Assembly: GCF_032191835.1 (NCBI RefSeq)
Contig: NC_083237.1
Coordinates: 17,918,001 to 17,982,000 of the forward strand
Reading direction: 5' to 3'
DNA length: 64,000 nucleotides
Source of the DNA: Heteronotia binoei
Lineage: Eukaryota
Shown here: piece by piece, positions 6,440 to 55,989 of the stretch
Position numbering within the stretch: position 1 is the first letter of the stretch
How the letters are laid out: the number at the start of each line of letters is the position of its first letter
Translations under genes and position numbers: made by a program
Notes under the pieces: generated by a model
What the model saw: only the letters and a program-made list of their open reading frames with translations
Databases searched by the model: none
What the model was told of the DNA's origin: nothing

Positions 6440-6840
6440 AAGATTAGAAAGACTGACCTACCCTTCAGTGCATTGGTGGGAAGAGAGAGACCCTCCACTA
6501 GCAACGACTGTTCTTGCCATCCCAACAATTAAATCACGTTGAGGGAAAGCCCTTCCGGAGGAGAATGGACTTGCTTCATTGCTGGCCCTGGTAAGAAGTC
6601 CAGACCCAGAATTTGGAGACCTTGTTAAGGAAGCTGGCAGTTGAAATTGCAAAGGGCAAACACATCCCATGGTGTTTGTGTGTGTGTGTAAAGGAACAGA
6701 ATGACAACAGGTACTCTGGCTTTTCCCGGTGGAGGGTGGCATGACTCATTTGTCCGTAACATCTGCAATATGATTCCCCCCCCCCATCCTTCTAGTGAGT
6801 TCATGAGAAATCAGGAATTTGGACTCCAGCTTCTACTCTG
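6440..6840 (-). promoter_or_regulatory. Putative promoter and non-coding exon 1 of A1
   Basis: Non-repeat block homologous to 17318-17694 and 28080-28270; degenerate composite at about 6610-6635; GTAGGT donor at 6461-6456. Confidence 0.6.
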
Positions 6841-8602: not shown

Positions 8603-8934
8603 TTTCCTGCTGGGTGTTGGCAATCTCCCACCCCTATTTCCTGTCAGCCTTCTGATTGCTGGTGTGAAGGGAAACAATTTTAAAAATGCCATCAGATAAC
8701 AGTGTGATGTCACTTCCAAGGAAAAACCCTGAAGTCAATCCTCTTTAGGAATCAGCAAAAATGCTGTGGTTTTACAACAGAGTTCCCAGCAATTCCTAGA
8801 AAGTCATGATGCCACTTCTGGGTTTTCCCTGAAGGGATGTTACACCACTGATGATCATGATTTCTTTTTTCTTTTCTGTCATTGGTCTCTGGACTACCAG
8901 CAGGCTTGTGGCAGCCTGAACTAGGCCTGATATA

Positions 8935-14849: not shown

Positions 14850-15275
14850 AATCAAACAATCCTGAACTCTCTCCCTAAAAGTTAAAATGTCCAAACTGAG
14901 GGTATCAAACCTTGGTTACACATGAGAAGACAAAAACACCGGAAAGGCAATAATGCTAGGAAAAGATGAAGGGAGCAGGAAAAAACGCAGTCCCAGCATG
15001 AGATGGATTGACACTATAGAGCAAGGGTGGCCAACGGTAGGTCTCCAGATGTTTTTTGCCTACAACTCCCATCAGCCACAGCCAGCATGGCCAATGGCTG
15101 GGGCTGATGGGAGTTGTAGGCAAAAAACATCTGGAGAGCTACCATTGGCCACCCCTGCTATAGAGGAAGCCACAGCTTCCAATATCTGTGCAAGGCTGTT
15201 AACAGGACAACATTTTTGGAGGACATTAAATCTTGGGGTCACCATAAGTCAAAAGTGACCTGATGGCACTTATTT
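14850..15275 (+). mobile_element. RTE (BovB-like) LINE 3' fragment interrupted by a MITE
   Basis: MLGK.EGSRKKRSPSMRWID motif. Confidence 0.7.
15022..15157. mobile_element. 136-bp palindromic hAT MITE (CAGGGGTGGCCAA TIR)
   Basis: 8-bp TSD CTATAGAG. Confidence 0.88.
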
Positions 15276-17317: not shown

Positions 17318-17694
17318 AGAAAAGGAAGACTGACCTACCCTTCCGTGCTCTGAGGGGAAGTGAGATCTCTCAGCCAGCTGTGACTGTTCATGGATTTCCA
17401 AGCTAAACTGTGTTGGGACAGAAAGCCCCACAATGGAAGAATGGACTTGCTCTATGGCTGGCCCTGGAAAAAAGATGAGCTCCAGCATTTGGGGACCTCA
17501 TTTTCAAATGTTAGCAACCGAATCTGCCAGGAGTGAAAGCATCCCATGGGGGGGAGTGTGTGTGAGGGAATAAAATGACGCAGGATGACACTGGACTAGC
17601 TTTTCCCAGTGGAGTGTGTCATGGCTCATTCCCTCTGTGATAGGACTCTTCTGCCCCCACGTCCTTCTAGTGAGTGCACGAGGAAGCTGGGGTT
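17318..17694 (-). promoter_or_regulatory. Putative promoter and non-coding exon 1 of A2
   Basis: Homologous to the A1 block; degenerate composite at about 17486-17515; O/E-like TCCCATGGGG at 17542-17551; GTAGGT donor at 17338-17333. Confidence 0.6.
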
Positions 17695-20072: not shown

Positions 20073-21002
20073 TCAACTCCTAGGTCTACATTTGCTCAAC
20101 AGTCTCCACATGGCTTGTTTGATCTCTCTGTTCCTCAGAGTGTAGATCATGGGGTTCATCAAGGGGAAGACCACAGTGTGGAGAACAGCCATGACCTTGT
20201 CAAAAGGAAATTCCATGAACGGACGACAATAGATGTAGATGGCTGGTCCAAACATGATAACCACCATGATGATGTGGGTGATGCAAGTGGAGGCAGCTTT
20301 GCTCTTCCCTCGGCTCAAGCCTGTCCTCACCTTGACCAACAGGATCCCATAGGAGACAAGGAGGAGGATGAAACAGACCAGGATGGAAATGCCACTGTTC
20401 ACAAACATGAAGAGCTCCAAGGTGTAGGTGTCCATGCAAGCCAATTTGACAATCTGAATAATGTCACAGAAGAAACTGTCTACCTTGTTGGGACCACAGA
20501 ATGGAAGAGGGACAATAAAGAAGACTTGGATAATGGAGTGAAAAAATCCTAAGCACCAGGAAGCCACCACCATGACACTGCAGACTGGCCTGCTCACTAC
20601 ACTTGAGTAACGTAAGGGGTGGCAAATGGCCATGTACCGATCGATAGCCATGCTAATGAGAAGGAAGACTTCTGATCCTCCAAGAAAATGGAGGAAGAAG
20701 AGCTGGGCCATGCAGCCCTTGTAGGAGATGGTCTTGTGGCGGGAGAAGAAGTCGGCCAGCATCTTGGGAGGGGTGACGGAGCAGTAGCAGATATCCAGGA
20801 AGGCTAAGTTGGCCAAGAAGAAGTACATGGGGGAGGCCAAGCGAGGGTCACTCCGGATGGTCAAGATGATGAGGACATTTGCTGGGAGGACCAATGAGTA
20901 GAAGACAAGGAACAGGACAAAGAGGAGGAGCTGGACTCCTCTGGCCTGGGAGAGGCCCAGCAGTACAAACTCCTTCACTGCAGAATGATTCCCTTGCTGC
21001 AT
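20073..21002 (-). CDS. Olfactory receptor family 4, OR4N/OR4M-like (A3), 309 aa
   Basis: Intact OR motifs. Start set at MQQGNHS (21002) by alignment to A1/A2; the 26-aa upstream extension is intronic. Confidence 0.96.
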   Translation of the reverse strand: MQQGNHSAVKEFVLLGLSQARGVQLLLFVLFLVFYSLVLPANVLIILTIRSDPRLASPMYFFLANLAFLDICYCSVTPPKMLADFFSRHKTISYKGCMAQLFFLHFLGGSEVFLLISMAIDRYMAICHPLRYSSVVSRPVCSVMVVASWCLGFFHSIIQVFFIVPLPFCGPNKVDSFFCDIIQIVKLACMDTYTLELFMFVNSGISILVCFILLLVSYGILLVKVRTGLSRGKSKAASTCITHIIMVVIMFGPAIYIYCRPFMEFPFDKVMAVLHTVVFPLMNPMIYTLRNREIKQAMWRLLSKCRPRS

Positions 21003-25458: not shown

Positions 25459-25795
25459 ACTCAGCCTTCCATCCTTCCGAGGTTGGTAAAATGAATACCC
25501 AGCTTGCTGGGGGGGGGGGGGAAGTGTAGATCAGGGGTGGCCAACGGTAGCTCTCCAGATGTTTTTTGCCTACAACCCTCATCAGCCCCAGCCAGCATGG
25601 CCAATGGCTGGGGCTGACGGGAGTTGTAGGCAAAAAACATCAGGAGAGCTACCGTTGGCCACCCCTAGTGTAGATGACTGGGGAAGACAATGGCAAACCA
25701 CCTCGTAAAAAGTCTGCCATGAAAACGTTGTGATGCGACGTCACCCTAGAGTCGGAAACAACTGGTGCTTGCACAGGGGACTACCTTTACTTTTT
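25459..25795 (+). mobile_element. 5'-truncated Sauria SINE with a nested 136-bp MITE (25532-25667)
   Basis: Sauria body; MITE TSD GTGTAGAT. Confidence 0.85.
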
Positions 25796-28079: not shown

Positions 28080-28270
28080 AAGAAAGACTGACCTACCTGT
28101 CAGTGCTTTGATGAGAAAAGAGAGGTCCTCAGCTATCACAAATCCCATCATGAAATTGTCTCTGGCCTTTTAGGAAAGCCCCACAACAGAACAGACATGC
28201 TTGACGGCTGGGTTGGAAGAATGCCCAGCCCAGTATTCAGGGACCTTGTTTAAAATAAAAAGTTAGCAGC
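28080..28270 (-). promoter_or_regulatory. Putative promoter and non-coding exon 1 of A3
   Basis: Homologous to the A1/A2 blocks; degenerate composite at about 28234-28267; AG|GTAGGT donor at 28096-28091. Confidence 0.58.
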
Positions 28271-31896: not shown

Positions 31897-32943
31897 TTAG
31901 ACAACTGGCAGCTGTGATGTCAGTTGAAGGCCTGGCCCACCTGGAAATCTGTTCCTCTGGTGTCGAGAGGACATCACCCTTCCTGCTGGAATAGTAGGAA
32001 CCTGAGCAGAGACCTGCATGGAATGTCTGGCCAGCAACTTCCCCGTGGCAGATTTCATTTCTTTGCTCTTTGGAGTATAGACAGCTGGGTTTAGCAATGG
32101 GGTGATGGTGATGGAGAAGACTGAGAATGCTTTATCATTTGCGAACCTGGTGAATGGATGCAGGTAAATAAATATACAGGGCCCAAAGTACATGGTGACC
32201 ACAATGAGGTGAGAAGTGCAGGTGGAGATGGCCTTGGAATTCCCTTCAGAAAGAGCTCTGGAACGGATTGCTGAGAGAATGAGTCCATAGGAGATGAACA
32301 AAGTAATGAACCCAACCAGAGAGATGATACCACTGTTGGTCACCATCATGATCTCCAGGGGATAGACGTCAACACAGGCCAACTTGATGACCAAGGGGAT
32401 GTCACAGAAGAAGCTGTCCAGATGGTTGGGCCCACAGAAGGGGACATTAATGGTGAAGCTCAACTGCACACTGGTGTGGAGGAGCCCTCCAGCCCAGGAG
32501 GCCAGCAAAAGCCCCACACAATGGCGTTGACTCATGAGTGAGGCATAGTGGGGCGGATGGCAGATGGCCATATAGCAGTCATAGGCCATAGTCATGAGTA
32601 GGATCATCTCACTGCCTCCAAACAGGTGGAGGAAGAAGATCTGTGCCATGCAGCCTTGAAAGGAGATGGTCTGATGCTTAACTAGGAAGTCAAAGAGGGC
32701 CCAGGGGATGGCAAAGGAGGACATGAGGAGGTCCAGGAAAGCCATGTGACCCAGAAGAAAGAACATGGGTGAACTGAGAAGATGTTGATTCTGGGAAATT
32801 GCCAAGATGATGAGAAGGTTGATGAAGAGTGTGGCCACATAGAGGACAACGAAGAACACAAATAAGAGGAGGTGGGCTTCCCAAGATGGGGAGAGGCCAA
32901 GGAGGACAAACTCAGTCACTGTGGTCCTGTTTCCCCACGCCAT
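31897..32943 (-). CDS. Olfactory receptor family 4, OR4K-like (B1), 348 aa; open frame but several canonical motifs altered
   Basis: OR4K-type signatures (LSFTINVPFCGPN..DSFFCDIPLVIKLAC, EIMMVTNSG). DRY>DCY, CHPL>CHPP and YxLKN>YTPKS suggest possible loss of function. Confidence 0.88.
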   Translation of the reverse strand: MAWGNRTTVTEFVLLGLSPSWEAHLLLFVFFVVLYVATLFINLLIILAISQNQHLLSSPMFFLLGHMAFLDLLMSSFAIPWALFDFLVKHQTISFQGCMAQIFFLHLFGGSEMILLMTMAYDCYMAICHPPHYASLMSQRHCVGLLLASWAGGLLHTSVQLSFTINVPFCGPNHLDSFFCDIPLVIKLACVDVYPLEIMMVTNSGIISLVGFITLFISYGLILSAIRSRALSEGNSKAISTCTSHLIVVTMYFGPCIFIYLHPFTRFANDKAFSVFSITITPLLNPAVYTPKSKEMKSATGKLLARHSMQVSAQVPTIPAGRVMSSRHQRNRFPGGPGLQLTSQLPVV

Positions 32944-36418: not shown

Positions 36419-37204
36419 AATGGTGTGGGTGGACGAACAGCCACATAATCTAGAACAATTCCTTAAGTATCCTTGAGTATGTCCAGCAGTGACCCAACTG
36501 CTCCAAATTTCATATCCTCCCACAGGAATGCCATATGGGATAGCCTTGTGGGACGATACATCCAGGGATGGAAAGGAAAGATAGGTAGTTTGATAGAAAA
36601 CAGAGAGATCTTCTCGGGAGAGACTACAGATTGTCATACTTCTCACAATCCCTTTTAAAAAATGAGATCTGTTTGGAAATAGGAGAAATGAACTACCTCC
36701 TGTTTGCTTGTTGGCAAAATTTAAGACGCAACCGGATTCTTACCCACCTGTTAAACCTCAAAAGGAGCTCTGAGACCAGGTTCTTCTGAAGTCCACCTTA
36801 GCATCAATATTAAAGGATTGCATCTGGACACATCTTCTATATAGAAGTGTGATGTGGAGGACATATATCTGCTCAGAATGCAGGCTGAAGGGAGATGAGA
36901 ACCAATCATAGGGAAAAGACGTGGGTACAAATAACAGTTCACTGTTTTGGGAAGGGGTGGTACGCATGGGTGTTTTATGAGCATGCATAGAAAGAAATCC
37001 GTCATTTATGTAATTAGGAGGAAAGGACCAAGAAAAGCATTCCTTAGAGAGCACACAAAAGCTTACGTTCCGAATAAAACTTGGTTGGTCTTAAAGGTTC
37101 TTCCCCTCATAGTTATAGTCTCTTTGGATCTTCTTCATCAGCTGTAGAAGCTGCCATAGTAAGGGCCACAGCACACGTAGAAAAAGATACCCAACTGCCA
37201 GCTT

Positions 37205-37229
37205 TCTCAAGGGACCTCATTAAAAAGTT
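37205..37229 (-). promoter_or_regulatory. Composite homeodomain (Lhx2/Emx2-type) + O/E(Ebf) site upstream of B1, with exact 13-mer AACTTTTTAATGA
   Basis: Minus strand reads AACTTTTTAATGA-GG-TCCCTTGAGA; about 4.3 kb upstream of the B1 ATG. Confidence 0.8.
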
Positions 37230-37589
37230 AAAACTGATTCTTACCATCAATGCACACAACCTCTGGGGGCAGTAGAGAGGCAGAAAGCAAGCAAGCCTTG
37301 ATCCAGATTCCTGTCTGGTACAAACTGATCCACAGAATTAGCAAAATAAAGGTTGTCTAAAGATACTTTCAGAGATGGGCTGGCAGAAGAAGAGGGATCT
37401 GGTTGATCTGACATCTACAAGATCAGCCACTGTGCTGATCTTCATGCAAAGAGGCCATAACTGGGAGAGTAGCCAGTTCCTCAAGTCCTTCTCCCAGTTA
37501 ATCACCGCATCTCAAGTTATCTTTCCCTTCATTCATATCTACTTTAGTAAACCACTTTTGAATCTGCCATTCAACAAAATTTTTAATTG

Positions 37590-39513: not shown

Positions 39514-40560
39514 TTATGCAATTGGTAACTGTGATGCTGAATGAACACCTGGCCCACCCTTACGGCTGCTTCTCTTGCATCTCCAAGAGGTGACCACTGC
39601 TGCTGAAATGACTGGAATCTGACTGGAAACCTTCGCAGAATATCTTCCCAACAACTTCCCCATGGCAGATTTCATCTCCTTGTTTTTCAAAGCATAGATG
39701 GCTGGGTTGAGCAAGGGAGTGATAGCTGTGTAGAAGACGGACAACACTTTATCAATTGTGAAGCGGGTCTTTGGACGCAGGTAAATAAATACACAAGGCC
39801 CAAAGTACATGGTGACCACGATGAGGTGAGAAGTGCACGTGGAGATGGCCTTGGAAGTCCCTTCAGAAGGAGCTCTGGAATGGATGGCTGAGAGAATGAG
39901 TCCATAGGAGACGAACAAAGTGATGAACCCAACCACTGAGAGGATACCACTGTTGGTCACCATCATGATCTCCAGGAGATAGATGTCAGTGCAGGCCAAC
40001 TTGATGACCAAGGGGATGTCACAGAAGAAGCTGTCCAGGTGGTTGGGTCCACAGAAGGAGACATTAATGGTGAAAGCCAACTGCACACTGGTGTGGAGGA
40101 GCCCTCCAGCCCAGGAGGCCAGCACAAGCCCCACACAATGGCATTGACTCATGAGTGAGGCATAGTGGAGTGGATGGCAGATGGCCACATAGCGGTCGTA
40201 GGCCATAGCCATGAGAAGAAACATCTCAGTGCCTCCAAACAGATGGAGGAGGAAGATCTGGGCCATGCAGCCTTGGAAGGAGATGGTCTGACGTTGGGTG
40301 AGGAAGTCAAAGAGGGCTCTGGGTGTGGCGAAGGAGGACAGGAAGAGGTCCAGGAAGGCCAAGTGACCCAGCAAAATGAACATGGGTGAACGGAGAAGAT
40401 GGCGGTCCTGGGAAATGGCCAGTAAAATAAGAAGGTTGCTAAAGAGGGTGGCTGTGTAGAGGAAAAGGAAGAGCATAAATAAGAGGAGACGGGCTTCCCA
40501 GGATGAGGAGAATCCAAGGAGGACAAACTCAGTCACCACAGTCTTGTTTCCCCACGCCAT
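39514..40560 (-). CDS. Olfactory receptor family 4, OR4K-like (B2), 348 aa
   Basis: Intact MAYDRYVAICHPLHY, KAISTC.SH, PLLNPAIY. Start set at MAWGNKT (40560) by alignment to B1. Confidence 0.95.
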   Translation of the reverse strand: MAWGNKTVVTEFVLLGFSSSWEARLLLFMLFLFLYTATLFSNLLILLAISQDRHLLRSPMFILLGHLAFLDLFLSSFATPRALFDFLTQRQTISFQGCMAQIFLLHLFGGTEMFLLMAMAYDRYVAICHPLHYASLMSQCHCVGLVLASWAGGLLHTSVQLAFTINVSFCGPNHLDSFFCDIPLVIKLACTDIYLLEIMMVTNSGILSVVGFITLFVSYGLILSAIHSRAPSEGTSKAISTCTSHLIVVTMYFGPCVFIYLRPKTRFTIDKVLSVFYTAITPLLNPAIYALKNKEMKSAMGKLLGRYSAKVSSQIPVISAAVVTSWRCKRSSRKGGPGVHSASQLPIA

Positions 40561-41394
40561 TCGCTTCTTGACTATCTCTGAGAAGACTGGGGAAAGAGAA
40601 AGGAAATGGTCATGAGCCACATCCACCCCAATTCCTTGCAGCTTTGGTTGAGTGTTACTTCCTTGTAGATGCTGCTCCCACCCAAAATTTTATCTTCAGA
40701 AGCAACATAATTCATTTCTTCAAGAAATTGTTCATCACCCAGAATACACTTCTCTGTCCTTAGAAATACCTGGGCATTTCCTAATAAATCCTGCAAATAG
40801 AATAGAACTAAATTGAACAATTTCCCCCCCTGCTGAGCCTCAGCCTTGTCTTGAAGCTGCCATGTAATAAGATTTATTAGAATACAGTGTATATGAAGCA
40901 GTTGGAACTATGAAAGCTAGAGTCAAGGAAGAAGCTGATGCAGATTTTGAGAATCAAATTCTTACCTGACAATGCTCTGACTCTCAAAAGCTGATACCCC
41001 CAAAATTGTGTTGGTCTCTGAGATACTATTCAAATCCCGCTGTTCTACTGCAGGCCAACTTTGAACAGTAAAACCCAATTCTAGATATTATGCTGCAAGC
41101 TCTGGCCATCAATGGCTTCATTAGAGTGTTGGAGGCAGCTTTCTGGTTTAAAAAAAATTAAAAATTGAATTTGTTTGAGGAACTGGTTTGGAGTTGTGTG
41201 GAAGAATTCCCCGGGTGAACCTGTCCCAGGCACTTTCCTTCAGCTGAAGGGTTGTGAAGGCTGTTCCACATCCACATGAAGTTGCATTACATTGAAGCGG
41301 ACCATTGGTACATGAAGCACAGTATTGTCTGCTCAGACCATCGGCGGCTTTTCAGGGTTTCAGGCAAAGGTCTTTCCCCTCTGAACATATGAAC

Positions 41395-44414: not shown

Positions 44415-45777
44415 CTTTCCTTTCCCCTACCTCTGCTGTTTTGGCAATGGAGGGGGGTGGGTAAACTCATTAATGGCCTTGGTAGGATCCAGACTAGCTT
44501 GCCAACTTCCAGTAATTTCCCCCTTCTTGCTGCCTACCCGCCCTCTACTCATATGATTCCTCAGGGTCTTGTATCCCTGAGGAGCAGCATTTTGCAGAGA
44601 CCAGTGGGCTGCAGCTGGAGGAGAGAGGCAGGTGAAAGACAACTAATTGGGCCATAATGCAAACAGCTGGAACTGATGATATCTCAATCGGCCAGATAGA
44701 GGGTGGAATACTGCAACAAGTGAGGCCAGACTCAGAGTACTATAGGCGTCTGCTGCCTCACTCAAAAGCCTGGGGGAACGTTGCTATCTGTGGCCACAAG
44801 ATGGCCATGTATGGATGCACTGTCTCAATGAAGCGTACGCACAGAGAACCAAGCATCCAGGCCTAGACACTCAGAGTTGATTCTGATTGAATCCACCAGC
44901 AGAAAACTCCTGTTCAAAAGTGCTCTTGTAAAGTCAGGAGCAACTCTGGGGTGAAACCACTTTCAGTGGCAATTCAAGAAAACGAGTGTAAATGACTTAA
45001 GAAAAAGCAAAGCAATGAAACACCCTTGGTTCCATGTCCATGACCCTAACAGGTCTTCTCGGATTTGCTGCTACCATTTGAATTTTACTGTTTTAATGTT
45101 TTTCAGGTTGTCAGGTCTCTGTTGGAAAATATCTGGAGACTTTGGGGGTGGAGCTAGGAGGGGAAAGGGAGGGGCCTTGGCATGGTGCAATGCCAGAGAG
45201 TCCACCCTTCAAAGCATCCACGTCCTCCAGGGGAGCTGATCTCTGCCAGCTGGAGATCAGTTATATAAGCGGGGGATCTCCAGGCCACACCTGGAGGCTG
45301 GCAACCCTAATTACTGACTTTGTTTGTTGTGATCTACCCTGAGCTTGCTTTGGGGAGGGCAGAATAGAAATCCAAAAAAATGAATAAATAAATCTCCAGA
45401 AAACAATTGTGTGATTTGGGCCTTTCCACAATGGATTTTACAGGCATTTTACTCCTCTCTTATTCATCTGGGGGATTGTTCCACACACATGCCTATGAAA
45501 TACTCTTCCATTCCTAAAAGTTAGAGTTTCTCTAATCTGTGCTCTGGAAGCTGTAGGGCTGCCAACCTCCAGATAGGACCTGGAGGTCTCTCAAAATTTC
45601 AAGACTATAGAAATATGTTCCCCTGGAGAAAAATGGTTGATATGGAGTGGGGACATTATGGCATTTTACCCTACTGAGGTCCCTCCCACTCCCCAGGCTG
45701 CTCCCACAAATCTCTAGGAATTTTCCACCCTTGAGTTGGCATCTCTAAGACAAGCAGAGGTATCCTTCCCTCATCTT

Positions 45778-45802
45778 CCTCAAGGGACCTCATTAAAAAC
45801 AT
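45778..45802 (-). promoter_or_regulatory. Composite homeodomain + O/E site upstream of B2
   Basis: Minus strand reads ATGTTTTTAATGA-GG-TCCCTTGAGG; same spacing and homologous flank as 37205-37310; about 5.2 kb upstream of the B2 ATG. Confidence 0.75.
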
Positions 45803-46549
45803 CACACTTGGCATCCCAAGCCACCACTGCCGACGACCTCTGGGGCAAACAGGAGACAGAGAGATGGAAGGCCTTGATCTGGACCCAAATCCAGAAGGAA
45901 ACAAGCCCCAGACAAAGCAAGAGAGATGCTGCTGCAAGCCCCTCCAGGGAGAAGGGCTTTGGGAGTCCACGTGAAATGGAGACCTGCCAATCCAAAAGGA
46001 CGTATCAGAACCACAGCTGAGTCCTTCAATCAGCTGTGCCAGTCAGCAGCACCACTGCTTCAAAATCCCTTCCTTTTTTTCATTTCTAGTTTGCAAATCC
46101 AAATCAGCCACAGGGGGAATCTGTCACAGAGAGACCAAAGTTGTAAAACAATAAATACAACTCTTGCATGGCAGATGCTTAATAGAAATGGCACAGAGTC
46201 AATTACAAGTTCCCTGCTCTTTTCTCACTGGGCACATTCACCTTATGAACTCTTCTTTGCCTGATAGATGATGCCAAAGGTTGTTTGGAGGATTATCCTG
46301 AACCGACATCTAAGGTTTCTATTTGCAAGGAACTTCAGGGTGTCTCATCATCACTTTCCTTGCATCCAAAACTGATAAACATGGTCACTTATTTGCACAT
46401 TTTAGCTTGCATCACCAACCCAAAAGCACCTCAAGAAATCATATCTTACATTCAGAATCACATCAGAATATGGGAGACATACTGATTAGGCATATAGTTT
46501 CTCTGTATTAGAGTTCATTTTTCATGTGTACTTCCAGCTGGATTACTGA

Positions 46550-46826
46550 TGATGATGATATTAGATTTATATTCCGCCCTATACTCTGAATCTCAGAGTC
46601 TCAAAGGTCCCAATCTCCTTTACCTTCCTCCCCCACAACAGACACCCTGTAAGGTGGATGGGGCTGAGAGAGCTTTGACAGCAGCTGCCCTTTCAATAAC
46701 AACTCTTACGAGAGTTATGGTTGACCCAAGGCCATTCCAGCAGCGGCAAGTGGAGGAGTGGGGAATCGAACCCTGTTCTCCCAGATAAGAGTCGGCACAC
46801 TTAATTTCTACACGAAACTGGCTCCT
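46550..46826 (-). mobile_element. Squam3-like SINE
   Basis: Same consensus as other copies. Confidence 0.72.
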
Positions 46827-47580
46827 ACACCAAACTGGCTCCTTTGAAACTAGCTTCTTGACAAAATGTTGGGACAGCAGGCAGCACGTCAGAGGGGCCA
46901 TTAATCTTGCTGCTGGAGCTGCTAAATAGCATTTTTGATTCCTGGCAAGAGGATATTTCAGAAGGCAAAAAGAAGGCAAGAAGAGGACAAAGGAATGTGC
47001 CATCTAGAATCTGCAAGCGGAGGTCTTCTGGAAGCATTGGCTTGAACTTCTGGTTGCATTTGGCTTGAACTTGGAAACCAAAGGTCTTCTGGACACATGC
47101 GTGTTTTAAAAGAACTGTATACCCCGTATCAAACTGTAGAATGCAATTGTGAAAAATGCAAGAGAGACATTTTCACATCAGCTCAAGTAACCCAAGGGGG
47201 ACTTATCCAATCACATAGGGACAGGTCATCAGGTCAGGCACCTGATGGACCAATTATAACTGTTTTGTATAATTTTGGGCGATGTCATGTTAAGTATAAC
47301 ATTCCTCAAAGAACTGTTGGTGCCTGAGGGTCTTTATCCCTCTGGTCAGTTTTCTTTAATTAATTAATTAAGTGTGGGGGAGTTAATTAACTCCTTTGCA
47401 TATTAGGCCACACACCCCTGATGTAGACAATTAATTGATCAGTTTTCATTTTTTTCACAGGACGCCAAGTGTGCTCTGAATTGGGCAGCGGAGCATGTTT
47501 GGCTCACAGGTTGTGTGCAACAAAACTGAGTGTTGTTGTTGTTGGGCTGATTTTCAGACTAGGCACCAAAGTGGTGCTTC

Positions 47581-47762
47581 CAGGGCCTTTTTTTGTAGCA
47601 GGAACTCCTTTGCATATTAGCCACACACCCCTGATGTAGCCAATCCTCCAAGAGCTTACAGGGCTCTTTGTACAGGGCCTACTGTAAGCTCCGGGAGGAT
47701 TGGCTACATCAGGGAGGCATGGGCTAATATGCAAAGGAGTTCCTGTTACAAAAAAAGCCCTG
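47581..47762. mobile_element. Palindromic hAT MITE (CAGGGCTTTTT family)
   Basis: 8-bp TSD GGTGCTTC. Confidence 0.85.
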
Positions 47763-48889
47763 GGTGCTTCACTTGCTCACCAACATCACAACTCTTCAGT
47801 CCCATCCAAAGTAGGTTAGAACCTGGGTACAGCAGTATAGGACCAGTTCTGCACAGACTAGAACCCACCAAGGTGAACACAAGCTGCCATGTTCTGTGGC
47901 CTGCCACATGTATCGCATATAGACCGCTTCCACTTTTACCAGTCAATAGTTTTATGGAGGCTTCATTGGGGCATCATAGATGGCCAATAGCGCATATTGA
48001 GTTCAGTGGCCCACAAATTGTGCTCTGTTTGCGTAGTTGTCACAGTACCAGGCTCCTAGAGAAATGGGCATTCTTGATGGCTTCTCAGCCTCAATTATCC
48101 TTCTGTCAAATGGGAAAGCAGGGCGGGGCTTGTTGCTTGTGGGCTTGTAAAAGCATGTGCATAAAGCACAACTCAAGTTGACCTGAAAAAACCGTACATG
48201 TGTCAGGCTAAAACCGTATTCACACATTTTTTGTAGCCACAAGTTGTGTCTGAGTACATAACGAACTAGCATTCTGAGGCTGTAGAAAAGAGCAAGCGCC
48301 CAGTCATACCTTAAAGACAAGCAACATCTATGGCAGGGACTGAACTTTCATGAGTCACTGCTCAGTTCTTCCCCCTCTCTCCCCCATCCCACCCAACACC
48401 GTCATCATACTAACTTCTTGAGAGCCCTTGGGTGGGAAGACATTCTAAGGATATGCTACATAAGTAAAAACTCGCCCAATGTTCTTCTTTCTCAGCATAC
48501 AGATAGGACAAAGGGAACATTAACTCATAAAAGTTCATACCCTGAACATCTTGTTGGTCTCTACTGTGCTCAACTCTAGATGTGCTACTGCAGTTCAACA
48601 GACGTTGTCTGACAAAGTGTGCACACACACAAAAGCTCACACCCAAAATAAAACTTTGTCTTTCTTAAAGGTGCCACTGGATTCTCACTTTGTTCTGTGG
48701 CTTCAGACCAACATGGCTGCCCACCTGAATGACCCTTACCATGCAGATCAGGAGAATAGCTCTACAGATGTCTTTTGCAAGTTCAATAGTATACATATGG
48801 AAATGGACAGAACAGCCATTTTGAAGACAGGAGATTTGCCCACCTATCCAACTCCTTTGGCTGCCACGTGGGAGATGGTGGAAATGCTT

Positions 48890-49332
48890 AGAAGAAGAAG
48901 ACTGTAGATTTATACCCCGCTCTTCACTCGGTAAAATGAGTACCCAGCTTGCTGGGGGGAAAGTGTGGATGACTGGGGAAGGCAATGGCAAACCACCCCG
49001 TAAAAAGTCTGCCATGAAAACGTTGTGAAAGCAACGTCACCTCAGAGTCGGAAATGACTGGTGCTTGCACAGGGGACTTTTCCTTTCCTTCACTCTGAAT
49101 CAGAATCTCAGAGCAGCTTACAATCTCTTCTATCTTCTTTCCCCACAACAGACACCCTGTGAGGTGAGTGGGACTGAGAGGGCTCTCCCAGAAGCTGCCC
49201 TTTCAAGGACAACCTCTGCAAGAGCTATGGCTGACTCAAGGCCATTCCAGCAGCTGCAAGTGGAGGAGTGAGGAATCAAACCCGTTTCTCCCAGATAAGA
49301 GTCCACGCACTTAACCACTACACCAAACTGGC
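48890..49332 (-). mobile_element. Squam3-like SINE with a nested 5'-truncated Sauria SINE (+, about 48931-49089)
   Basis: TSD ttcactc flanks the Sauria piece. Confidence 0.78.
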
Positions 49333-49508
49333 ATAATTACCTTTTATTGGTTATGTGTTTCAGTTTAAAAAGGTGATGTGGTGACGTTTGCATAGATCAT
49401 AAGTGACCATACCTTTCCTGCAATGGCTTGTTTGGACCTAAATAATACAACATTATCCCTTCTTGGGTCTGTATTTATTACTACGACATTTTTTAAAATA
49501 TAGCTCAC

Positions 49509-49813
49509 AGCGGCCCCGTGGCACAGTGGTAAAGCAGCAGTACTGCAGTACTGTGGTCTGAACTCTCTGTTCACGATCTGAGTTCGATTCCGGCGGAAGC
49601 TGGATTCAGGTTGCCGGCCCAAGGTTGACTCAGCCTTCCATCCTTCCGAGGTCGGTCAAATGAGTACCCGGCTTGCTGGGGGGAAAGTGTAAAAAGACCG
49701 GGGAAGGCAACGGCAAACCACCCCGTAAAAAAGTCTGCCGTGAAAACGTTGTGAAAGCAACGTTACCCCAGAGTCGGAAACGACTGGTGCTTGCACAGGG
49801 GACTTTTCCTTTC
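49509..49813 (+). mobile_element. Sauria SINE, full length
   Basis: gcggccccgtggcacagtggtaaagc head to acttttcctttcc tail. Confidence 0.85.
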
Positions 49814-49947
49814 CATAAGATAGATTGGAAGAGGAAAGACCTCCTTCTCATGACAGGTTATTACCAATATTTTTCATCATTACGAGCGTGTGGATTCTAG
49901 AGTGTAGACAGTTGCGTGAATACAGAAGATGCGGTTCAAGAGACTTG

Positions 49948-50214
49948 GACCGATTTCACACTAGGGCTTGTTCCGGGTGGAAAGCCTTTTTGCTCCCAGG
50001 GCTTTCTCTCCGTTTTCACACAAGTTGCCCCAGAGCTGCAAGTTGATGCACCGCTATTCCGCAGCAAGTGAGATCCTCTGACAAGCAGTTTCTGCTTGCT
50101 ATGGAAAAGTGGTACATCAACTTGCAGCTCCGCAGCAGCTTATGCGGAAATTGAGAGAAACCCTGGGGGCAAAAGGGCTCTCTACCCGGAACAAGCCCTA
50201 GTGCAAAATCGGTC
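49948..50214. mobile_element. Palindromic MITE (PIF/Harbinger-like, GACCGATTTCACACTA TIR)
   Basis: 3-bp TSD TTG; second copy at 62680-62945 with TSD TGA. Confidence 0.75.
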
Positions 50215-50497
50215 TTGATGATTTTGGCACATTACTATAGAAATGCTACAGCACTGCTATATGATGAATCTAATACACCAATCTAGATAACCTGGGTATC
50301 TTTTCCCTAGTGTATATATTAATTTCTTTCAAGTACTTGAGGAGATATGGTTGATACAATATCGAGCCCTAATATTAATGAATTAAATTGCTACATAATT
50401 ACTTTTCGGATACTTCAATGTTAGCACACAATCCAAGAAAGTAAAAAGAAAAAAAAATCAATACATCGACCTTTATGTCACAGTATTGTTTTTTAAT

Positions 50498-51433
50498 TCA
50501 CTTGTCCCTTCCAACTTTATTTTTCTTTAGCAGTCTGAACATAGCAGCTTTGATCTCCTTGTTCCTCAAGGTGTAGATCATGGGGTTCATCAAAGGAAAG
50601 ACCACAGTGTGGAAAAAGGCCACCACCTTGTCCAATGGGAAGTCTTGGAAAGGGCGGCAATAGATATAGATGGCCGGGCCAAACATAATGAAGACGATGA
50701 TGATGTGGGTGATGCACGTGGATGCGGCTTTGTTCTTCCCTTGGACCGAACCTGTCCTCACTTTGACCAGCAAGGCCCCGTAGAAGATGAGGAGAATGAT
50801 AAAGCATGTGGCGGTGACCAGGCCACTATTGATAAACATGGCAAACTCCAAGGTGTAGGTGTTGGTGCACGCCAACTTGATGATCTGGGTGATGTCACAG
50901 AAGAAGTTGTCCAGTTCGTTTGGACCGCAGAAAGGGAGTGGGATGATGAGAATCATTTGGATCATAGAGTGCATGAAGCCTTCAGCCCATGAGCCAATCA
51001 CTAGCACCCAGCAAACGACTCTGGTCATTGTCGTGGCATAATGCAGTGGGTGGCAAATGGCTACATATCGGTCAACCGCCATGGCAACAAGCAAGCAAAT
51101 CTCAGCTGCACCTAGGAAGTGGATGAAAAAAATTTGCGCCAAGCAGCCTTGATAGGAGATGGTTTTCTGGCGAGTGAAGAGGTTGGCCATCATCTTTGGA
51201 GGGGTGACAATGCTATAGCAGATGTCCATAAAGGCCAGGCTGGACAAGAAGAAAAACATGGGGGACCCTAGGCGGAGGTCACTCCGAATTGTCACAATGA
51301 TAAGGATATTCCCTGGTAGAATGATGACATAGAAGAGTAATAAGAGGGCACAGAGGAACAACTGTAATTCCCAGTTCTTTGCTAATCCTTGGAGAACAAA
51401 CTCTGTCACCACTGTGCGATTCCCACGTTCCAT
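50498..51433 (-). CDS. Olfactory receptor family 4, OR4N/OR4M-like (C1), 311 aa
   Basis: MERGNRT start, [40 protein letters not shown]. Confidence 0.96.
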   Translation of the reverse strand: MERGNRTVVTEFVLQGLAKNWELQLFLCALLLLFYVIILPGNILIIVTIRSDLRLGSPMFFFLSSLAFMDICYSIVTPPKMMANLFTRQKTISYQGCLAQIFFIHFLGAAEICLLVAMAVDRYVAICHPLHYATTMTRVVCWVLVIGSWAEGFMHSMIQMILIIPLPFCGPNELDNFFCDITQIIKLACTNTYTLEFAMFINSGLVTATCFIILLIFYGALLVKVRTGSVQGKNKAASTCITHIIIVFIMFGPAIYIYCRPFQDFPLDKVVAFFHTVVFPLMNPMIYTLRNKEIKAAMFRLLKKNKVGRDK

Positions 51434-51649
51434 CCTTACAATGAATAGCTATGTAGTGGGGTTATTATTGATATGGCTACTATTGTTAATATTATTTACA
51501 GAAACATATATTAGGGAGGGGATACAGAAATAGTGTTTGGGATGTATATCAAAACACAACTAAAACGTTCATGCCTCCTCTTTGCATATACACCTTGTTA
51601 TACTACTGCCATTGAGTAGGTTAGCTATGGATGGTCCAGAAATTTGTTT

Positions 51650-51985
51650 ATTTATTTTATTAAATTTATATCCTGCCCTCCCTTATTGGGCTCAGGGTGG
51701 CTAACAACAGTTGAAATACATAATGTTAAAATAAATTACAGGAAAATCGTTAAAATTCATTGTACACATACAATACATTTGCAGTTTTAATACTAAAATC
51801 CAAGATGGCGTCAGTATTATTAGTTCCTATTTAGAGCTGCATACAGTAATGTTGTCAAAGACTGTTTAGCGCACTATATTTATACTGGGATGGGTTTAGG
51901 TATCAGTGCTGTGATAAAGTGGTCACTTCCCTGTTAGTTGTTAAAAGTTAGTTTAAACGGTTCTGTTTTGCAGGCCTTACAGAAT
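51650..51985 (-). mobile_element. L2-like LINE 3' end
   Basis: Related to 1790-2100. Confidence 0.6.
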
Positions 51986-52192
51986 TGTGGCAAGTGAAAT
52001 GATCTTTCTCCCCAGATTTTTGGAGTTCTGAATTACCTGCTCCAATTTCCAAAACGGGAACCTGTGCCCAACACTGGCTCTTAATTTTTCGTTGCACCCA
52101 GCTTTTCTGGTATGGGAGATGATGGCAGGATGAGTGGTCTCTGGTTCATCTAGGAGGCAAGATGAAGACATAGGTCAGCTGGCTGGTTTTCA

Positions 52193-52421
52193 TTTATTTT
52201 TCTTTAGCAGTCTGAACATAGCAGCTTTGATCTCCTTGTTCCTCAAGGTGTAGATCATGGGGTTCATCAAAGGAAAGACCACAGTGTGGAAAAAGGCCAC
52301 CACCTTGTCCAATGGGAAATCTTGGAAAGGGCGGCAATAGATATAGATGGCCGGACCAAACACAATGATGATGTGTGTGATGCATGTGGATGCGGCTTTG
52401 TTCTTCCCTTGGACTGAACCT
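52193..52421 (-). pseudogene. Partial duplicate of the C1 3' end (TM6-TM7-C-terminus) with a 9-nt in-frame deletion
   Basis: Aligns to 50516-50753 with only a few substitutions. In the OR frame it reads ..[33 protein letters not shown]-stop; no 5' part. Confidence 0.93.
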
Positions 52422-52469
52422 TTGTTCTATCACTTCAGACCAACATGGATGCCCACCTGGATCACTCTC

Positions 52470-53030
52470 CCTTGTCGCCTGTAATCAAATTGTTGCTGGT
52501 GTTTGTCTCTTATTGATTGGCCTTTCTTATGACAAATACTGTTTTGTTCCATCCAGTAAAGCCCACTGCATGCATTCAGGACTGCCTCTCCCCATATGTG
52601 CCCCAGAGAGCACTACGTTTGGATCCCAAAATCTTCTTAAGATCCCCGGACTGAAAGAAGGTCAACTGTCCACCACTAGAGCCAGAGCGTTTTCAACAAT
52701 AGCCCCCGCTCTGTGGAATGCCCTCCCTGAAAACATCAGGGCCCTGCAGGACCTGCCACAGTTTCGCCGGGCCTGCAAGACCAAACTATTTAAACTTGCC
52801 TTCAACGGTTAAGGGGAGGTCGCTAATTCCCCACAGCACTGACAATCTCATTGGACAAATACAGATAATCAGACATGCATCTTGGATTTTTATGGCTGGA
52901 ACATGTATGTTTATTGTATATTCTGGGTTTTTAAAAAAATATTCTATGTGGTTTTGAGCTGTTGTTAGCCACCCTGAGCCCGTTAGGGGAAGGCGGGATA
53001 TAAATTTGATAAAATAAAAATAAATAAAAT
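52470..53030 (+). mobile_element. L2-like LINE 3' fragment
   Basis: TRARAFSTIAPALWNALPENIRALQDLPQFRRACKTKLF. Confidence 0.78.
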
Positions 53031-53311
53031 TTGATAAATTTATTTATTTATATTTAATTCCATTTATATCCCACCCTCCCCGCCGAGGTGGGCTCAGGGC
53101 GGCTTACGTGGTCATGCACATACATGAGTAAACATAATGATAGGGCATAAAAGCCATAAAAACCATAAAACAGTTTAAAAACATAGAATAATTGACATTT
53201 CGGTGCAATGATCTTAAGTTTCAGATTAATGATTCTCTGTAAACTGAACTCTAGTCCACAAAAACTCGTGTGTTAAATAAGTTGCTTCCAACTTACAGTG
53301 ACTCTATGAAT

Positions 53312-53595
53312 CAGGGGTGGACAAACTGTGGCTTGGGAGCCACTTGTGGTCCTTTCATACATATTGTGTGGCTCTTGAAGCCCTCACCATGCTGTTGGCC
53401 AGATTGGAGAAGTCATTTGTCTCTTTAAATCACTTCTCCAAGTCAATGCAGAGAATGCATTTAAAGTTAAATTTGCTTTCTTTCCACCTCCCCATCTATT
53501 CTTTCCCTCTCTCTCTCTCTTCCTGTCTTGTGACTCTCAAACATCTGACGTTTATTCTATGTGGCTCTTATGTTAAGGAAGTTTGGCCACCCCTG
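53312..53595. mobile_element. Non-autonomous hAT element inserted in an RTE fragment
   Basis: 8-bp TSD CTATGAAT; RTE VEGSRKRKRPDVRWIDSIK on the minus strand at about 53600-53740. Confidence 0.82.
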
Positions 53596-54570
53596 CTATG
53601 AATTAATGACCTCCAAACCCCCCCTCTCATTAACAGCCTTGCTCAGGTCTTGCAAACTGAGGGCCACAGCTTGTTTTATGGAGTCAATCCATCTCACGTC
53701 GGGTCGTTTTCTTTTCCTGCTGCCCTCCACTGCTGCCCTCCACAAAAGCTTTTGCCAGACTAAAAGAATTTCAACTGTCACAAGACTTCCTGTTTAATTT
53801 TGCTGCAACAGACTAACATCTCTGGAATTATGTTCAGGGGAAGGGGTTCATGCATATTAACGGCCTTTTTAAATTGCTTCCTCAATTTCACACTAAAGAC
53901 AGAAGACAATGTAGTTGTTTACAAGGTGTTAGAAAACACAGACCAGCCTTGGCATCTAGAGATCATCAGGGTGCAATAAGGGGATTCAATGTCTTTCCTT
54001 TATCAATGGGGCATTTCCCACTTCTGCCTCTGAAGCAGTAGCCAAAGGGAAGGAAGCTGCCCAATCCACACCTCTATGGCTTTCTAATGCCTGAATGGCT
54101 GGAGTAGGAACTGCAGAAGACCAGTGGAAGAAGAAGAGTAGGTTTCTATACCCCGCTCTTCTCTGTTTTCTGCACCCAAGAGTTCACCAGGGAACAGAAA
54201 TGAGTTGCTCTGGAAGGCTGATCTTTGTGAAATATCCTGAGAATTATTCAGATAGATGATTTGATAGATAGTTCAACTTACTCTGGGGCAAACATTTATG
54301 CAAAGCTCTGGCCAGCAGGGAAGAAGAGACTTGTGTGGATCTGTTGAGAAGGTTCTTCTAGCAAAATGTTGAAGGATGGCCAAGGAGATCAGTTGGAGGA
54401 GAGAAGAGGAAAGTCATTCACCACTGTTTCCTTCCAAATGACTGGCTGTTCTTCAAGGGAAAAGAAGGCTTCCAGATCATCATAGCTGTGCTGCTGCAGG
54501 CCCTAGGAGAGCCTGGAGTGAGAAGGTGTATTTAAGGACACACAAACTTCTGGTGTGTTGCTCCTGTCAG

Positions 54571-54595
54571 TCCCCAAGGACCTTATTAAAAAGTT
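54571..54595 (-). promoter_or_regulatory. Composite homeodomain + O/E site upstream of C1
   Basis: Minus strand reads AACTTTTTAATAA-GG-TCCTTGGGGA; same 2-nt spacer; about 3.1 kb upstream of the C1 ATG; GTAAGT donor at 54281-54276. Confidence 0.72.
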
Positions 54596-55989
54596 AGCAC
54601 CAAACTAATATTCCATACCACTTCTGCAAGCAGCACAAGATAGACAATCTCTTTTTGCACTTCTGAGTCCTTCAGGGCACGTTCAGATCTCTGCGAATAG
54701 TGAGCAATATGGATGACTCTCTTTATCATGCCTATTTTGTGAGCCCCTCCAAGTTTCAAAAAGATTGGACCAGGGAGTCCAATTCTAAGAGCCCCAAAAG
54801 AAGGTGCCCCTATCCTTCATTATTTCCAATGGAGAGAAGGCATTTAAAAGGTGTGCAGTCCCTTTAAATGTGATGGCCAGAACTCCCTTCAGAGTTCAGT
54901 TATGCTTATCACAACCTTGCTCCTGACTCCACCCCCAGTGTCTCCTGGCTCCACCCCCAAAGTCCCCAGATATTTCTTGAATTGGACTTGGGAACCCTAC
55001 TTAGGCATGTTGGCTAAGTGGAATCTCCATGTTCAGAGGCAGATATTCTTCTGCAGTTGGTACTGAAAGTCTGAGTAGGACTGTTTGTTAGGCCAGGGAC
55101 TTGGTTTCCAGGCCCCACTCAGTCAGGTGTTCTCTCTTAACCTAACCTACTTTCAGTGGTTGCCATGACAATAAAATGGAGGGAAGCACACCAACCCTAG
55201 GTTCTATCAGGAAAGACAAAGATGATTTTTGTAAAATGGGACACAATGTGCATCTGTTGATTTGGGTTTGTTTGTTTTTTGTGAGGTGAAAGCTGCCGTT
55301 TAGTCCTTCTTGTTTGGAAGTTTACCCCTACTGGCACTTGGGAACAAATTTCTCACAATGGTTAGAAATAAAAATGGCGGGAAGAGAAGGGTAAGCTCTG
55401 GAGAAAAGGCGCTATCAACACAGTGCTTGTATTTCTCTCTGTGTCTGTGCATATTTAGACATTTACTTAGCATACCCGGATAGAAAAATGCTAACAAATG
55501 TTTCAAGAGTGGAACCACTAACATTGACTTCAAAATATTTAATTCAAGTTTACAGTTCTACAAATCTATATTTTCATTTTTTCCCAGTCATCTTAAAATA
55601 GTTTCATTCTTAAAATTTTGGTCAAAATCCATAACCATAAGATATTATAAGGGCCTTAACAATCCATCCCTTCCATACACAGAATAAGTGTTCTGCCTTC
55701 ACACACGTACACCTGAAATTCTCAGTGAGGCTCGATAGCAAGAAGTCTTCCACGGCTGCATTTTCTGGACCTCAAATCACACACAGGATCCCATGGAGTG
55801 CCACTTACATGAGCAGTGCAAAATGGCAGTGCAGGTTTTTCTGCAATTGCAATATTACACCAAATTGAGACCACCTCTGGATCACTTCCAAGCAGAGATG
55901 CCCTCCTTTGGGGTATTAGCCGAGAACAGAATGAATTTCTGTGATGTAGTCTATCCTAGATTTCGAAAGTTTTAGTAGTTTTAAAGAGT

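What the first reader, a model, noticed from the sequence alone, without database searches (positions are those of the whole stretch)
45778..54595. The same HD-GG-O/E module sits upstream of both OR4K-like and OR4N-like genes: a per-gene ancient promoter cassette
Seen: 45778-45802 (ATGTTTTTAATGA-GG-TCCCTTGAGG, 11/13 match) and 54571-54595 (AACTTTTTAATAA-GG-TCCTTGGGGA, 12/13 match) keep the identical 2-nt spacer, orientation and upstream position (5.2 and 3.1 kb). The B and C proteins belong to different OR4 subfamilies and their wider flanks barely align. A GTAAGT donor lies about 290 bp downstream of the C1 module. Inference: the cassette was inherited with each duplicated gene unit and kept by selection, so choice elements here may be distributed per gene instead of acting as one cluster-level enhancer.
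Basis: partly seen in the sequence, partly recalled or inferred. Interest (0 to 1): 0.75.

Follow-up and report, generated by a model that had tools for sequence, protein, structure and literature searches.

The report
Conserved promoter switch before gecko smell-receptor genes
Each smell-receptor gene in this stretch of Bynoe's gecko DNA has, a few kilobases upstream, its own conserved block with two adjoining transcription-factor sites; it is most likely the gene's promoter, built like the mouse "Greek Island" enhancer motif, but no RNA data could confirm it.

Summary
Both motifs are real. They lie on the minus (gene) strand, 5.2 kb upstream of an OR4K-like gene and 3.1 kb upstream of an OR4N-like gene of Heteronotia binoei. 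A third copy lies at 37205-37229. Chance expects about 0.15 matches to the shared pattern.

Each motif lies in a 300-400 bp block found once per gene, in sense orientation. I found 12 C-type and 7 B-type blocks in geckos, a skink, a lacertid, an anguid and a snake. Eighteen of the 19 keep the same 2-nt spacing. The motif is the best-conserved 25 nt of each 600-bp alignment. C-type blocks also keep a splice donor 150 nt downstream, and the genes keep an acceptor just before the ATG. I therefore read the blocks as promoter plus short non-coding exon 1.

- **Not supported:** with the motif deleted, B and C blocks show no homology, so a shared origin is unproven.
- **Not supported:** nothing was found in alligator, turtle or a marsupial.
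- **Does not follow:** "instead of a cluster enhancer".

No RNA run was listed, so the start site is inferred. In mouse, this adjoining-site motif marks enhancers rather than promoters. The scan already followed up the neighbouring 37205 site (s1-330095) and reached a similar verdict.

The parts
45778..45802 (-). B2 module: extended homeodomain site (11/13), 2-nt spacer GG and an O/E-like site, 5.2 kb upstream of the B2 ATG
   Evidence: The orthologous site is in Eublepharis at L002:15140-15164, 5.8 kb upstream of its B gene.
54571..54595 (-). C1 module: extended homeodomain site (12/13), GG spacer and an O/E-like site, 3.1 kb upstream of the C1 ATG
   Evidence: Orthologous sites are in Eublepharis, 3.0 kb upstream (L002, TAAT core at 6987), and in Paroedura (L003, module anchor at 8698).
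37205..37229 (-). B1 module: 13/13 match to AACTTTTTAATGA, then GG and TCCCTTGAGA, 4.26 kb upstream of the B1 ATG
   Evidence: Already covered by earlier scan note s1-330095.
45586..45970 (-). B-type conserved block around the B2 module (candidate promoter); it carries a B2-specific insertion of about 120 nt downstream of the module
   Evidence: nhmmer E = 1.2e-92; alignments
54385..54692 (-). C-type conserved block around the C1 module (candidate promoter plus exon 1)
   Evidence: nhmmer E = 2.7e-87; alignments. It is the only sense-oriented, non-coding, non-repeat island that aligns to lacertid and anguid DNA.
37002..37400 (-). B-type conserved block around the B1 module; interrupted about 110 nt downstream by a repeat
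   Evidence: nhmmer E = 9.1e-80; the repeat is recognised
54416..54422 (-). Position of the splice donor conserved in C-type blocks (GGTRAGT in other species; here the weakened GGTGAAT), 150 nt downstream of the module
   Evidence: GT in 11 of 12 blocks and GC in one; the alignment decays just downstream of it (profile)
54276..54281 (-). It is present but not conserved in other species; it may be a replacement donor in this gene.
50498..51433 (-). C1 coding exon (OR4N-like, 311 aa); AG acceptor about 15 nt upstream of the ATG (51449-51450)
39514..40560 (-). B2 coding exon (OR4K-like, 348 aa from MAWGNKT); conserved AG acceptor 11 nt upstream of the ATG (40572-40573)
6611..6628 (-). A1 degenerate module TTAACAA-GG-TCTCCAAAT; conserved donor GGTAGGT 150 nt downstream (6461)
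17487..17504 (-). A2 degenerate module AAAATGA-GG-TCCCCAAAT; donor GGTAGGT 149 nt downstream (17338)
28235..28252 (-). A3 degenerate module TAAACAA-GG-TCCCTGAAT; donor GGTAGGT 139 nt downstream (28096)

Best explanation
The two sites are the core of per-gene promoter blocks of olfactory receptor genes. Each block is about 300-400 bp. It carries one composite site: an extended homeodomain site of the Lhx2 type, then, after exactly two bases, an O/E site of the Ebf type.

By analogy with mouse, Lhx2 and Ebf would bind side by side here and open the promoter in the neuron that chooses this gene. Transcription would start roughly 100 nt downstream. A short non-coding exon 1 would end at a donor about 150 nt after the site. 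A 3-5 kb intron would then be spliced to an acceptor 11-15 nt before the ATG.

**Shown.**
- The sequence and position of the sites.
- One block per gene, in sense orientation.
- Blocks duplicated together with their genes within each subfamily.
- Conservation across Squamata, peaking on the motif.
- Conserved donor and acceptor consensus sequences.

**Inferred.**
- Factor binding.
- The position of the start site.
- The role in gene choice.

Whether the B-type and C-type modules share an ancestor, or were shaped alike by the same pair of factors, is open.
For: **Not chance.** There are three sense-strand matches in 64 kb against 0.15 expected, and the literature 25-mer has 2 matches against 0.00 expected.

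**One block per gene.** nhmmer finds 12 C-type and 7 B-type blocks. All are on the gene strand, 1-6 kb upstream of an OR ATG, in Heteronotia, Eublepharis, Paroedura, Tiliqua, Podarcis, Elgaria and Thamnophis. A-type blocks lie upstream of the three A genes and of their gecko and skink relatives.

**Fixed spacing.** Eighteen of 19 B/C blocks keep the module with no indel between the two half-sites.

**Conservation peak.** The ten best 25-nt windows of each 600-bp alignment all start within 9 nt of the motif. Identity is 0.74 against a mean of 0.38 for C, and 0.82 against 0.40 for B.

**Island of conservation.** Against lacertid and anguid DNA, the C1 block is the only sense-oriented, non-coding, non-repeat stretch that aligns.

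**Splice signals.**
- Donor GGTRAGT lies 150 nt downstream of the module in 11 of 12 C-type blocks, with GC in the twelfth.
- GGTAGGT lies 139-150 nt downstream in the three H. binoei A-type blocks and is conserved in the five-block alignment with Eublepharis.
- Acceptors just upstream of the ATG are conserved.

**Mouse literature.**
- OR promoters carry O/E and HD sites within a few hundred bp of the start site (PMC12547500).
- The mouse Sfaktiria composite has the same TAAT-to-O/E register, and a 2-bp insertion impairs its recognition (PMC5608512).
Against: - No RNA run was listed for this stretch. The start site, exon 1 and splicing are therefore all inferred.
- In H. binoei C1 the conserved donor is weakened to GTGAAT.
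- For B-type blocks no donor is conserved beyond geckos, and the conserved part lies mostly upstream of the motif.
- No clear TATA box is conserved.
- In mouse the composite arrangement is described as typical of enhancers and depleted from promoters (PMC5608512, PMC11643329, PMC12547500). Only 4 of the first ~215 promoter rows of the source data score 10 or more.
- Between the two geckos much intergenic DNA still aligns, so that pairwise comparison alone proves little.
Confidence: 0.7

Rival explanations
1. The blocks are gene-proximal enhancers of the Greek Island type, not promoters. Lhx2 and Ebf bind the composite cooperatively and keep the element open in most olfactory neurons, while the real start sites lie elsewhere.
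For: - In mouse the juxtaposed HD-O/E composite marks enhancers and is reported as absent from promoters.
- The spacing register equals that of the Sfaktiria composite.
- An orphan B-type block with an intact module and no B gene lies upstream of C2 (L001:3733-4121). Elgaria has two C-type blocks upstream of one gene.
Against: - There is one block per gene rather than a few per cluster.
- A donor consensus is conserved at a fixed 140-150 nt downstream in C- and A-type blocks, and the alignment decays right after it. That pattern fits an exon-intron border.
- Blocks duplicate together with their gene.
Confidence: 0.15
2. One reading: one ancestral OR4 cassette was inherited by every duplicated gene unit since before the OR4K/OR4N split. 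Gene choice in this cluster is run by these per-gene elements instead of a cluster-level enhancer.
For: - The A, B and C modules share AACTTTTTAA(T/C)RA-GG-TCC, including bases outside the core contacts.
- The module-to-donor distance is the same (about 150 nt) in A and C blocks.
- One weak collinear hit links C and A blocks with the motif deleted (E = 0.003).
Against: - With the motif deleted, B and C profiles share nothing.
- No block or clear composite was found upstream of the alligator, turtle or marsupial OR4K/OR4N-like genes within 10 kb, although the B/C split predates amniotes.
- The same 13-mer occurs in unrelated mouse elements. Constraint from the binding factors can therefore explain the likeness.
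- The absence of a cluster enhancer was not tested and cannot be tested here.
Confidence: 0.25
3. Chance matches, or pieces of a repeat that happens to lie near OR genes.
For: The motifs are short and AT-rich on the homeodomain side, and the window is full of SINE- and MITE-like repeats.
Against: - The chance expectation is 0.15 or less.
- The sites do not overlap multi-copy repeats.
- They sit at syntenic positions in species about 200 million years apart, always on the gene strand.
Confidence: 0.02

Closest known systems
Mouse class II OR gene promoters (for example M71, P3): HD and O/E sites within a few hundred bp upstream of the start site, non-coding exon 1, intron, single coding exon (Rothman 2005, Clowney 2011 and Plessy 2012, as cited in PMC5608512 and PMC12547500)
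   Same: - One per gene, in sense orientation and a few kb upstream of the coding exon.
- HD and O/E motifs.
- A short upstream exon is predicted, spliced to an acceptor just before the ATG.
   Different: - Here the two sites adjoin at a fixed 2-nt spacing, which the mouse literature reports as depleted in promoters.
- The start site is not mapped.
- The organism is a squamate.
Greek Island composite Lhx2/Ebf motif (Monahan et al. 2017, PMC5608512; also in the class I J element, PMC7804114)
   Same: - A homeodomain site directly followed by an O/E-like site.
- The same TAAT-to-O/E register as the Sfaktiria EMSA probe.
- A degenerate O/E half, as in many mouse composites.
   Different: - Mouse composites lie in a few intergenic enhancers per cluster that act on many genes. 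Here there is one per gene, with exon-like features downstream.
- The HOMER matrix was not on hand, so no composite score could be computed.
Extended homeodomain 13-mer AACTTTTTAATGA of the mouse H and P elements and P3 promoter; the x21 'gene choice enhancer' ACATAACTTTTTAATGAGTCT
   Same: Matches are 13/13 (B1), 12/13 (C1) and 11/13 (B2). The TTTTTAAT core is kept in 16 of 19 B/C blocks.
   Different: In the mouse x21 no O/E site follows at this spacing. Any function in the gecko is untested.
Earlier findings of this scan in the same genome: s1-330095 (the 37205 site) and s1-325736 (a ~130-bp block upstream of six OR genes of another clade)
   Same: The same kind of per-gene, sense-oriented upstream block, conserved among lizards.
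   Different: This report adds the following:
- the B2 and C1 sites and the C2 copy beyond the window;
- the A-type TAAC variant;
- the conservation-peak test;
- the negative test for B-C homology;
- the conserved donor.

Membership tests
OR gene promoter of the mouse type | HD and O/E motifs upstream of the gene, on the gene strand | tested here: met
   present for B1, B2, C1 and C2, and degenerate for A1-A3
OR gene promoter of the mouse type | Motifs lie within a few hundred bp upstream of a mapped transcription start site | not testable with these tools
   No RNA run was listed. The only support is indirect: a conserved donor 140-150 nt downstream.
OR gene promoter of the mouse type | Non-coding exon 1 spliced to an acceptor just upstream of the ATG | tested here: inconclusive
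   The donor consensus is conserved in 12/12 C-type blocks (one with GC) and in the five A-type blocks aligned. The acceptor AG is conserved upstream of the ATG. No transcript evidence.
OR gene promoter of the mouse type | One element per gene, duplicated with the gene | tested here: met
   Exceptions are the orphan block X, a second block in Elgaria and in Eublepharis, and no block found for the Paroedura B gene.
Greek Island composite motif / enhancer | HD and O/E sites juxtaposed at the stereotyped spacing | tested here: met
   The spacing is invariant in 18 of 19 blocks. The register equals that of the Sfaktiria probe, where the authors inserted bases between TAATTGA and TCTCCAAGGAAT. The register assignment of that degenerate O/E site is tentative.
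Greek Island composite motif / enhancer | HOMER composite score of 10 or more with the published matrix | not testable with these tools
   The matrix is not in the text or in the held supplements.
Greek Island composite motif / enhancer | Few intergenic elements per cluster, acting on many genes at long range | tested here: not met
   Seven blocks for seven genes in the window, each at a fixed place upstream of its gene. Long-range action is not testable.
Greek Island composite motif / enhancer | Co-bound by Lhx2 and Ebf and open in most mature olfactory neurons | not testable with these tools
   No ChIP or ATAC data for any squamate was available here.
Extended HD 13-mer (H and P elements, P3 promoter) | Sequence AACTTTTTAATGA | tested here: met
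   13/13 at 37217-37229, 12/13 at 54583-54595 and 11/13 at 45790-45802

The most novel reading that the evidence does not exclude
In squamates the composite Lhx2/Ebf grammar, which in mouse distinguishes the long-range Greek Island enhancers from OR promoters, sits in the promoter of each gene of this OR4 cluster (the A-type blocks carry a TAAC variant). It has stayed there for roughly 200 million years. On this reading the enhancer grammar began as promoter grammar. Orphaned promoter blocks, such as block X upstream of C2, would be the raw material from which cluster-level enhancers arise.
Probability: 0.25. Interest if true: 0.75.

Novelty: new variant of a known kind. Interest (0 to 1): 0.5.

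Why it matters
OR gene choice is understood almost only from mouse. There, the side-by-side Lhx2/Ebf composite is held to separate enhancers, which are always open and form hubs, from promoters, which stay closed until chosen.

A reptile in which this composite is conserved in a promoter-like block of each gene would matter in three ways:
- It shows that the binding grammar is far older and more rigid than the surrounding DNA.
- It gives precise, testable promoter predictions for annotating squamate OR genes.
- It raises the question of whether the enhancer/promoter division of labour is a mammalian refinement.

It remains a prediction until start sites and factor binding are measured.

Tried and rejected
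**RNA evidence.** The look-up of sequencing runs listed no RNA run, so read laying could not be used.

**Homology between block families with the motif deleted.** B against C gave nothing. A against C gave one marginal collinear hit (E = 0.003). A against B gave nothing.

**Outgroups.** Alligator sinensis B-like and C-like genes, the Chrysemys C-like gene and the Sarcophilus OR4K14-like gene were searched with 10 kb of flank each. There was no block hit and no convincing composite. An alligator TAATTA-AT-ACTCTGGGGA 4 kb upstream of the B-like gene has no supporting context.

**Leads that turned out to be repeats.**
- The 91%-identical stretch upstream of A2 and A3 (15017-15167 and 25527-25677) looked like a candidate A promoter. 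It is a fold-back repeat, as is 6029-6175 / 12989-13145.
- The GTAAGC about 140 nt downstream of the B1 motif lies in a repeat that is also present in Paroedura.

**Gene models.** The long Gnomon models of Tiliqua and Paroedura have extra 3' exons, not 5' exons. They say nothing about the start site.

**Other points.**
- A conserved upstream start codon in exon 1 was considered and dropped, because the ATG is not conserved.
- No TATA box could be assigned firmly.
- The published composite matrix was not available, so no composite score was computed.
Full report
**What the window is.** The window comes from Bynoe's gecko, Heteronotia binoei. It holds seven intact olfactory receptor genes, all on the minus strand:
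- A1 660-1589, A2 10029-10958 and A3 20073-21002, which are closest to the C genes;
- B1 31897-32943 and B2 39514-40560, which are OR4K-like and 348 aa long;
- C1 50498-51433 and C2 59084-60019, which are OR4N-like and 311 aa long.

B and C proteins are 42-48% identical. A and C proteins are 62-68% identical.

On the gene strand, 45778-45802 reads ATGTTTTTAATGA-GG-TCCCTTGAGG and 54571-54595 reads AACTTTTTAATAA-GG-TCCTTGGGGA. These are 11/13 and 12/13 matches to AACTTTTTAATGA. That sequence is the extended homeodomain site of the mouse H and P elements and the P3 promoter (PMC7804114) and the core of the x21 'gene choice enhancer'. Two bases later comes an O/E-like decamer.

- The sites lie 5.2 and 3.1 kb upstream of the B2 and C1 start codons.
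- A third copy, 13/13, lies at 37205-37229, 4.26 kb upstream of B1.
- The shared pattern has 3 matches, all on the gene strand, against 0.15 expected. The literature-defined 25-mer with up to 3 mismatches has 2 matches against 0.00 expected.
- None of the sites lies in a multi-copy repeat.

**Each site lies in a block that recurs once per gene.** I fetched the DNA around orthologues from other species and built profiles. nhmmer found 12 C-type blocks of about 300 bp and 7 B-type blocks of about 390 bp. The species are Heteronotia, Eublepharis, Paroedura, Tiliqua (skink), Podarcis (lacertid), Elgaria (anguid) and Thamnophis (snake). Every block is on the strand of the neighbouring OR gene, 1-6 kb upstream of its ATG.

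Synteny is kept:
- The Eublepharis C1 orthologue has its module 3.0 kb upstream.
- The Eublepharis B orthologue has its module 5.8 kb upstream.
- The Thamnophis B orthologue has its module 4.6 kb upstream.

It is at L001:5095-5119, equivalent to about 64.9 kb and 4.9 kb upstream of C2. It reads AACTTTTTAATAA-GA-GCCTTGGAGA.

The three A genes have their own block family, also found in Eublepharis, Paroedura and Tiliqua. Their module is a variant, TTTTTAACAA-GG-TCCC..., at 6611-6628, 17487-17504 and 28235-28252. The TAAC core is itself conserved.

**The motif is the conservation peak.**
- Eighteen of the 19 B/C blocks keep the module with no indel between the two half-sites. Sixteen have an intact TAAT and two have TAAC.
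- In free MAFFT alignments of 600 bp, the ten best 25-nt windows all start within 9 nt of the motif. Mean pairwise identity there is 0.74 against 0.38 overall for C, and 0.82 against 0.40 for B.
- Between the two geckos much intergenic DNA still aligns, so that comparison alone is weak.
- Against skink, lacertid, anguid and snake DNA, the C1 block is the only sense-oriented, non-coding, non-repeat stretch of the 7.6-kb intergenic region that aligns.

**Why a promoter rather than an enhancer.** C-type blocks keep a donor consensus GGTRAGT 150 nt downstream of the module in all 12 copies. GT is kept in 11 and one has GC. The alignment decays just after it. A-type blocks keep GGTAGGT 139-150 nt downstream. 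Both gene groups keep an AG acceptor after a pyrimidine tract, 11-15 nt before the ATG. For the B genes this extends to alligator.

The simplest reading is promoter, short non-coding exon 1, a 3-5 kb intron, then the coding exon. This is the usual layout of mouse OR genes, whose promoters carry O/E and HD sites within a few hundred bp of the start site (PMC12547500).

Weak points remain:
- In H. binoei C1 the conserved donor position reads GTGAAT (54421).
- For B-type blocks only a gecko-specific GTAAAA is seen, and the conserved part lies mainly upstream of the module.
- No TATA box is firmly conserved.
- No RNA run was listed for this stretch, so the start site is inferred.

**Origin of the likeness between B and C.** Within each family the blocks are plainly copies made when the genes duplicated. 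Between families only the module is shared. With 26 nt around the motif deleted, the B and C profiles do not find each other. A and C give a single marginal collinear hit (E = 0.003).

No block or convincing composite was found within 10 kb upstream of OR4K- or OR4N-like genes of alligator, turtle or Tasmanian devil. Yet the B/C split is older than amniotes, since each is closer to its mammalian namesake than to the other. The same 13-mer also occurs in unrelated mouse elements.

Common descent with eroded flanks, and parallel shaping by the same pair of factors, are therefore both open. 'Ancient' is shown only for Squamata. From general knowledge, the gecko lineage split from other squamates roughly 200 million years ago.

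**Comparison with what is known.** In mouse, Monahan et al. (PMC5608512) found that Lhx2 and Ebf sites placed side by side form a 'composite' motif. It is enriched in the 63 Greek Island enhancers, 35 of which have a strong one, relative to OR promoters. Later papers describe composites as depleted from, or not found in, promoters (PMC11643329; PMC12547500). In the part of the published source data that I read, 4 of the first ~215 promoter rows score 10 or more.

The Sfaktiria composite used in their gel shifts, AACTTTTTAATTGA|TCTCCAAGGAAT, has the same TAAT-to-O/E register as the gecko modules. Inserting 2 bp at the bar impaired recognition. The register assignment of that degenerate O/E site is tentative.

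The gecko modules therefore look like Greek Island composites by sequence, but they are distributed like promoters. I could not compute the published composite score because the matrix is not in the held texts.

'Per-gene elements instead of a cluster enhancer' does not follow. In mouse both layers coexist, and nothing here tests for a cluster-level element.

One observation bears on the question. An orphan B-type block with an intact module lies 1.2 kb upstream of C2's own block (L001:3733-4121). It is a copy of the B2 upstream region, and there is no B-type coding remnant within 10 kb. Such gene-less promoter blocks could in principle serve as enhancers.

**Verdict.**
- Best explanation: per-gene OR promoter blocks whose conserved core is a composite Lhx2/Ebf-type site (confidence 0.7).
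- I rate it a new variant of a known kind, of moderate interest.
- The scan had already followed up the neighbouring 37205 site (s1-330095) with a similar verdict, and a like block in another OR clade of this genome (s1-325736).

Noticed in passing
L001:3733-4121 (H. binoei, equivalent to about 65.9-66.3 kb, beyond the window's end): An orphan B-type block with an intact module (GGGTTCTTAATGA-GG-TCCCCTGAGG). It lies 1.2 kb upstream of C2's own C-type block and is a copy of the B2 upstream region (77-84% identity). No B-type coding remnant lies within 10 kb.
   Followed up: partly
window 52193-52421: A 229-bp copy of the 3' end of the C1 coding sequence (93.7% identical to 50516-50753). It lies about 0.8 kb upstream of the C1 ATG, inside the putative intron 1.
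   Followed up: partly
window 6611-6628, 17487-17504, 28235-28252; L011:6019 and 13863; L003:19811-20140; L004:18968-19201: A-type blocks keep TTTTTAACAAGGTCCC, with TAAC rather than TAAT, in Heteronotia A1, Eublepharis, Paroedura and a skink (H. binoei A2 and A3 read AAAT and AAAC). The non-canonical core therefore seems to be selected in its own right. Two Elgaria C-type blocks also have TAAC.
   Followed up: partly
window 15017-15167 and 25527-25677; 6029-6175 and 12989-13145: Two families of fold-back (MITE-like) repeats lie upstream of the A genes. They mimic conserved upstream blocks.
   Followed up: yes
window 31897-32943 and 39514-40560: The B receptors are 348 aa long, with a C-terminal tail of about 37 aa beyond the usual OR end. 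Proteins of the same length with full coverage occur in snakes (Thamnophis, Notechis, Protobothrops).
   Followed up: no
L002:18231-18627 (Eublepharis): A second B-type block without a recognisable module lies 2.3-2.7 kb upstream of the B gene. It is downstream of the module-bearing block at L002:14962-15349.
   Followed up: no
window 45600-45720: The B2 block carries an insertion of about 120 nt between the module and the downstream conserved part. B1, X and Eublepharis lack it.
   Followed up: no
window 7334-8236: A 300-aa minus-strand ORF resembling the C-terminal part of a LINE-1 ORF2. This was judged by eye and not searched.
   Followed up: no
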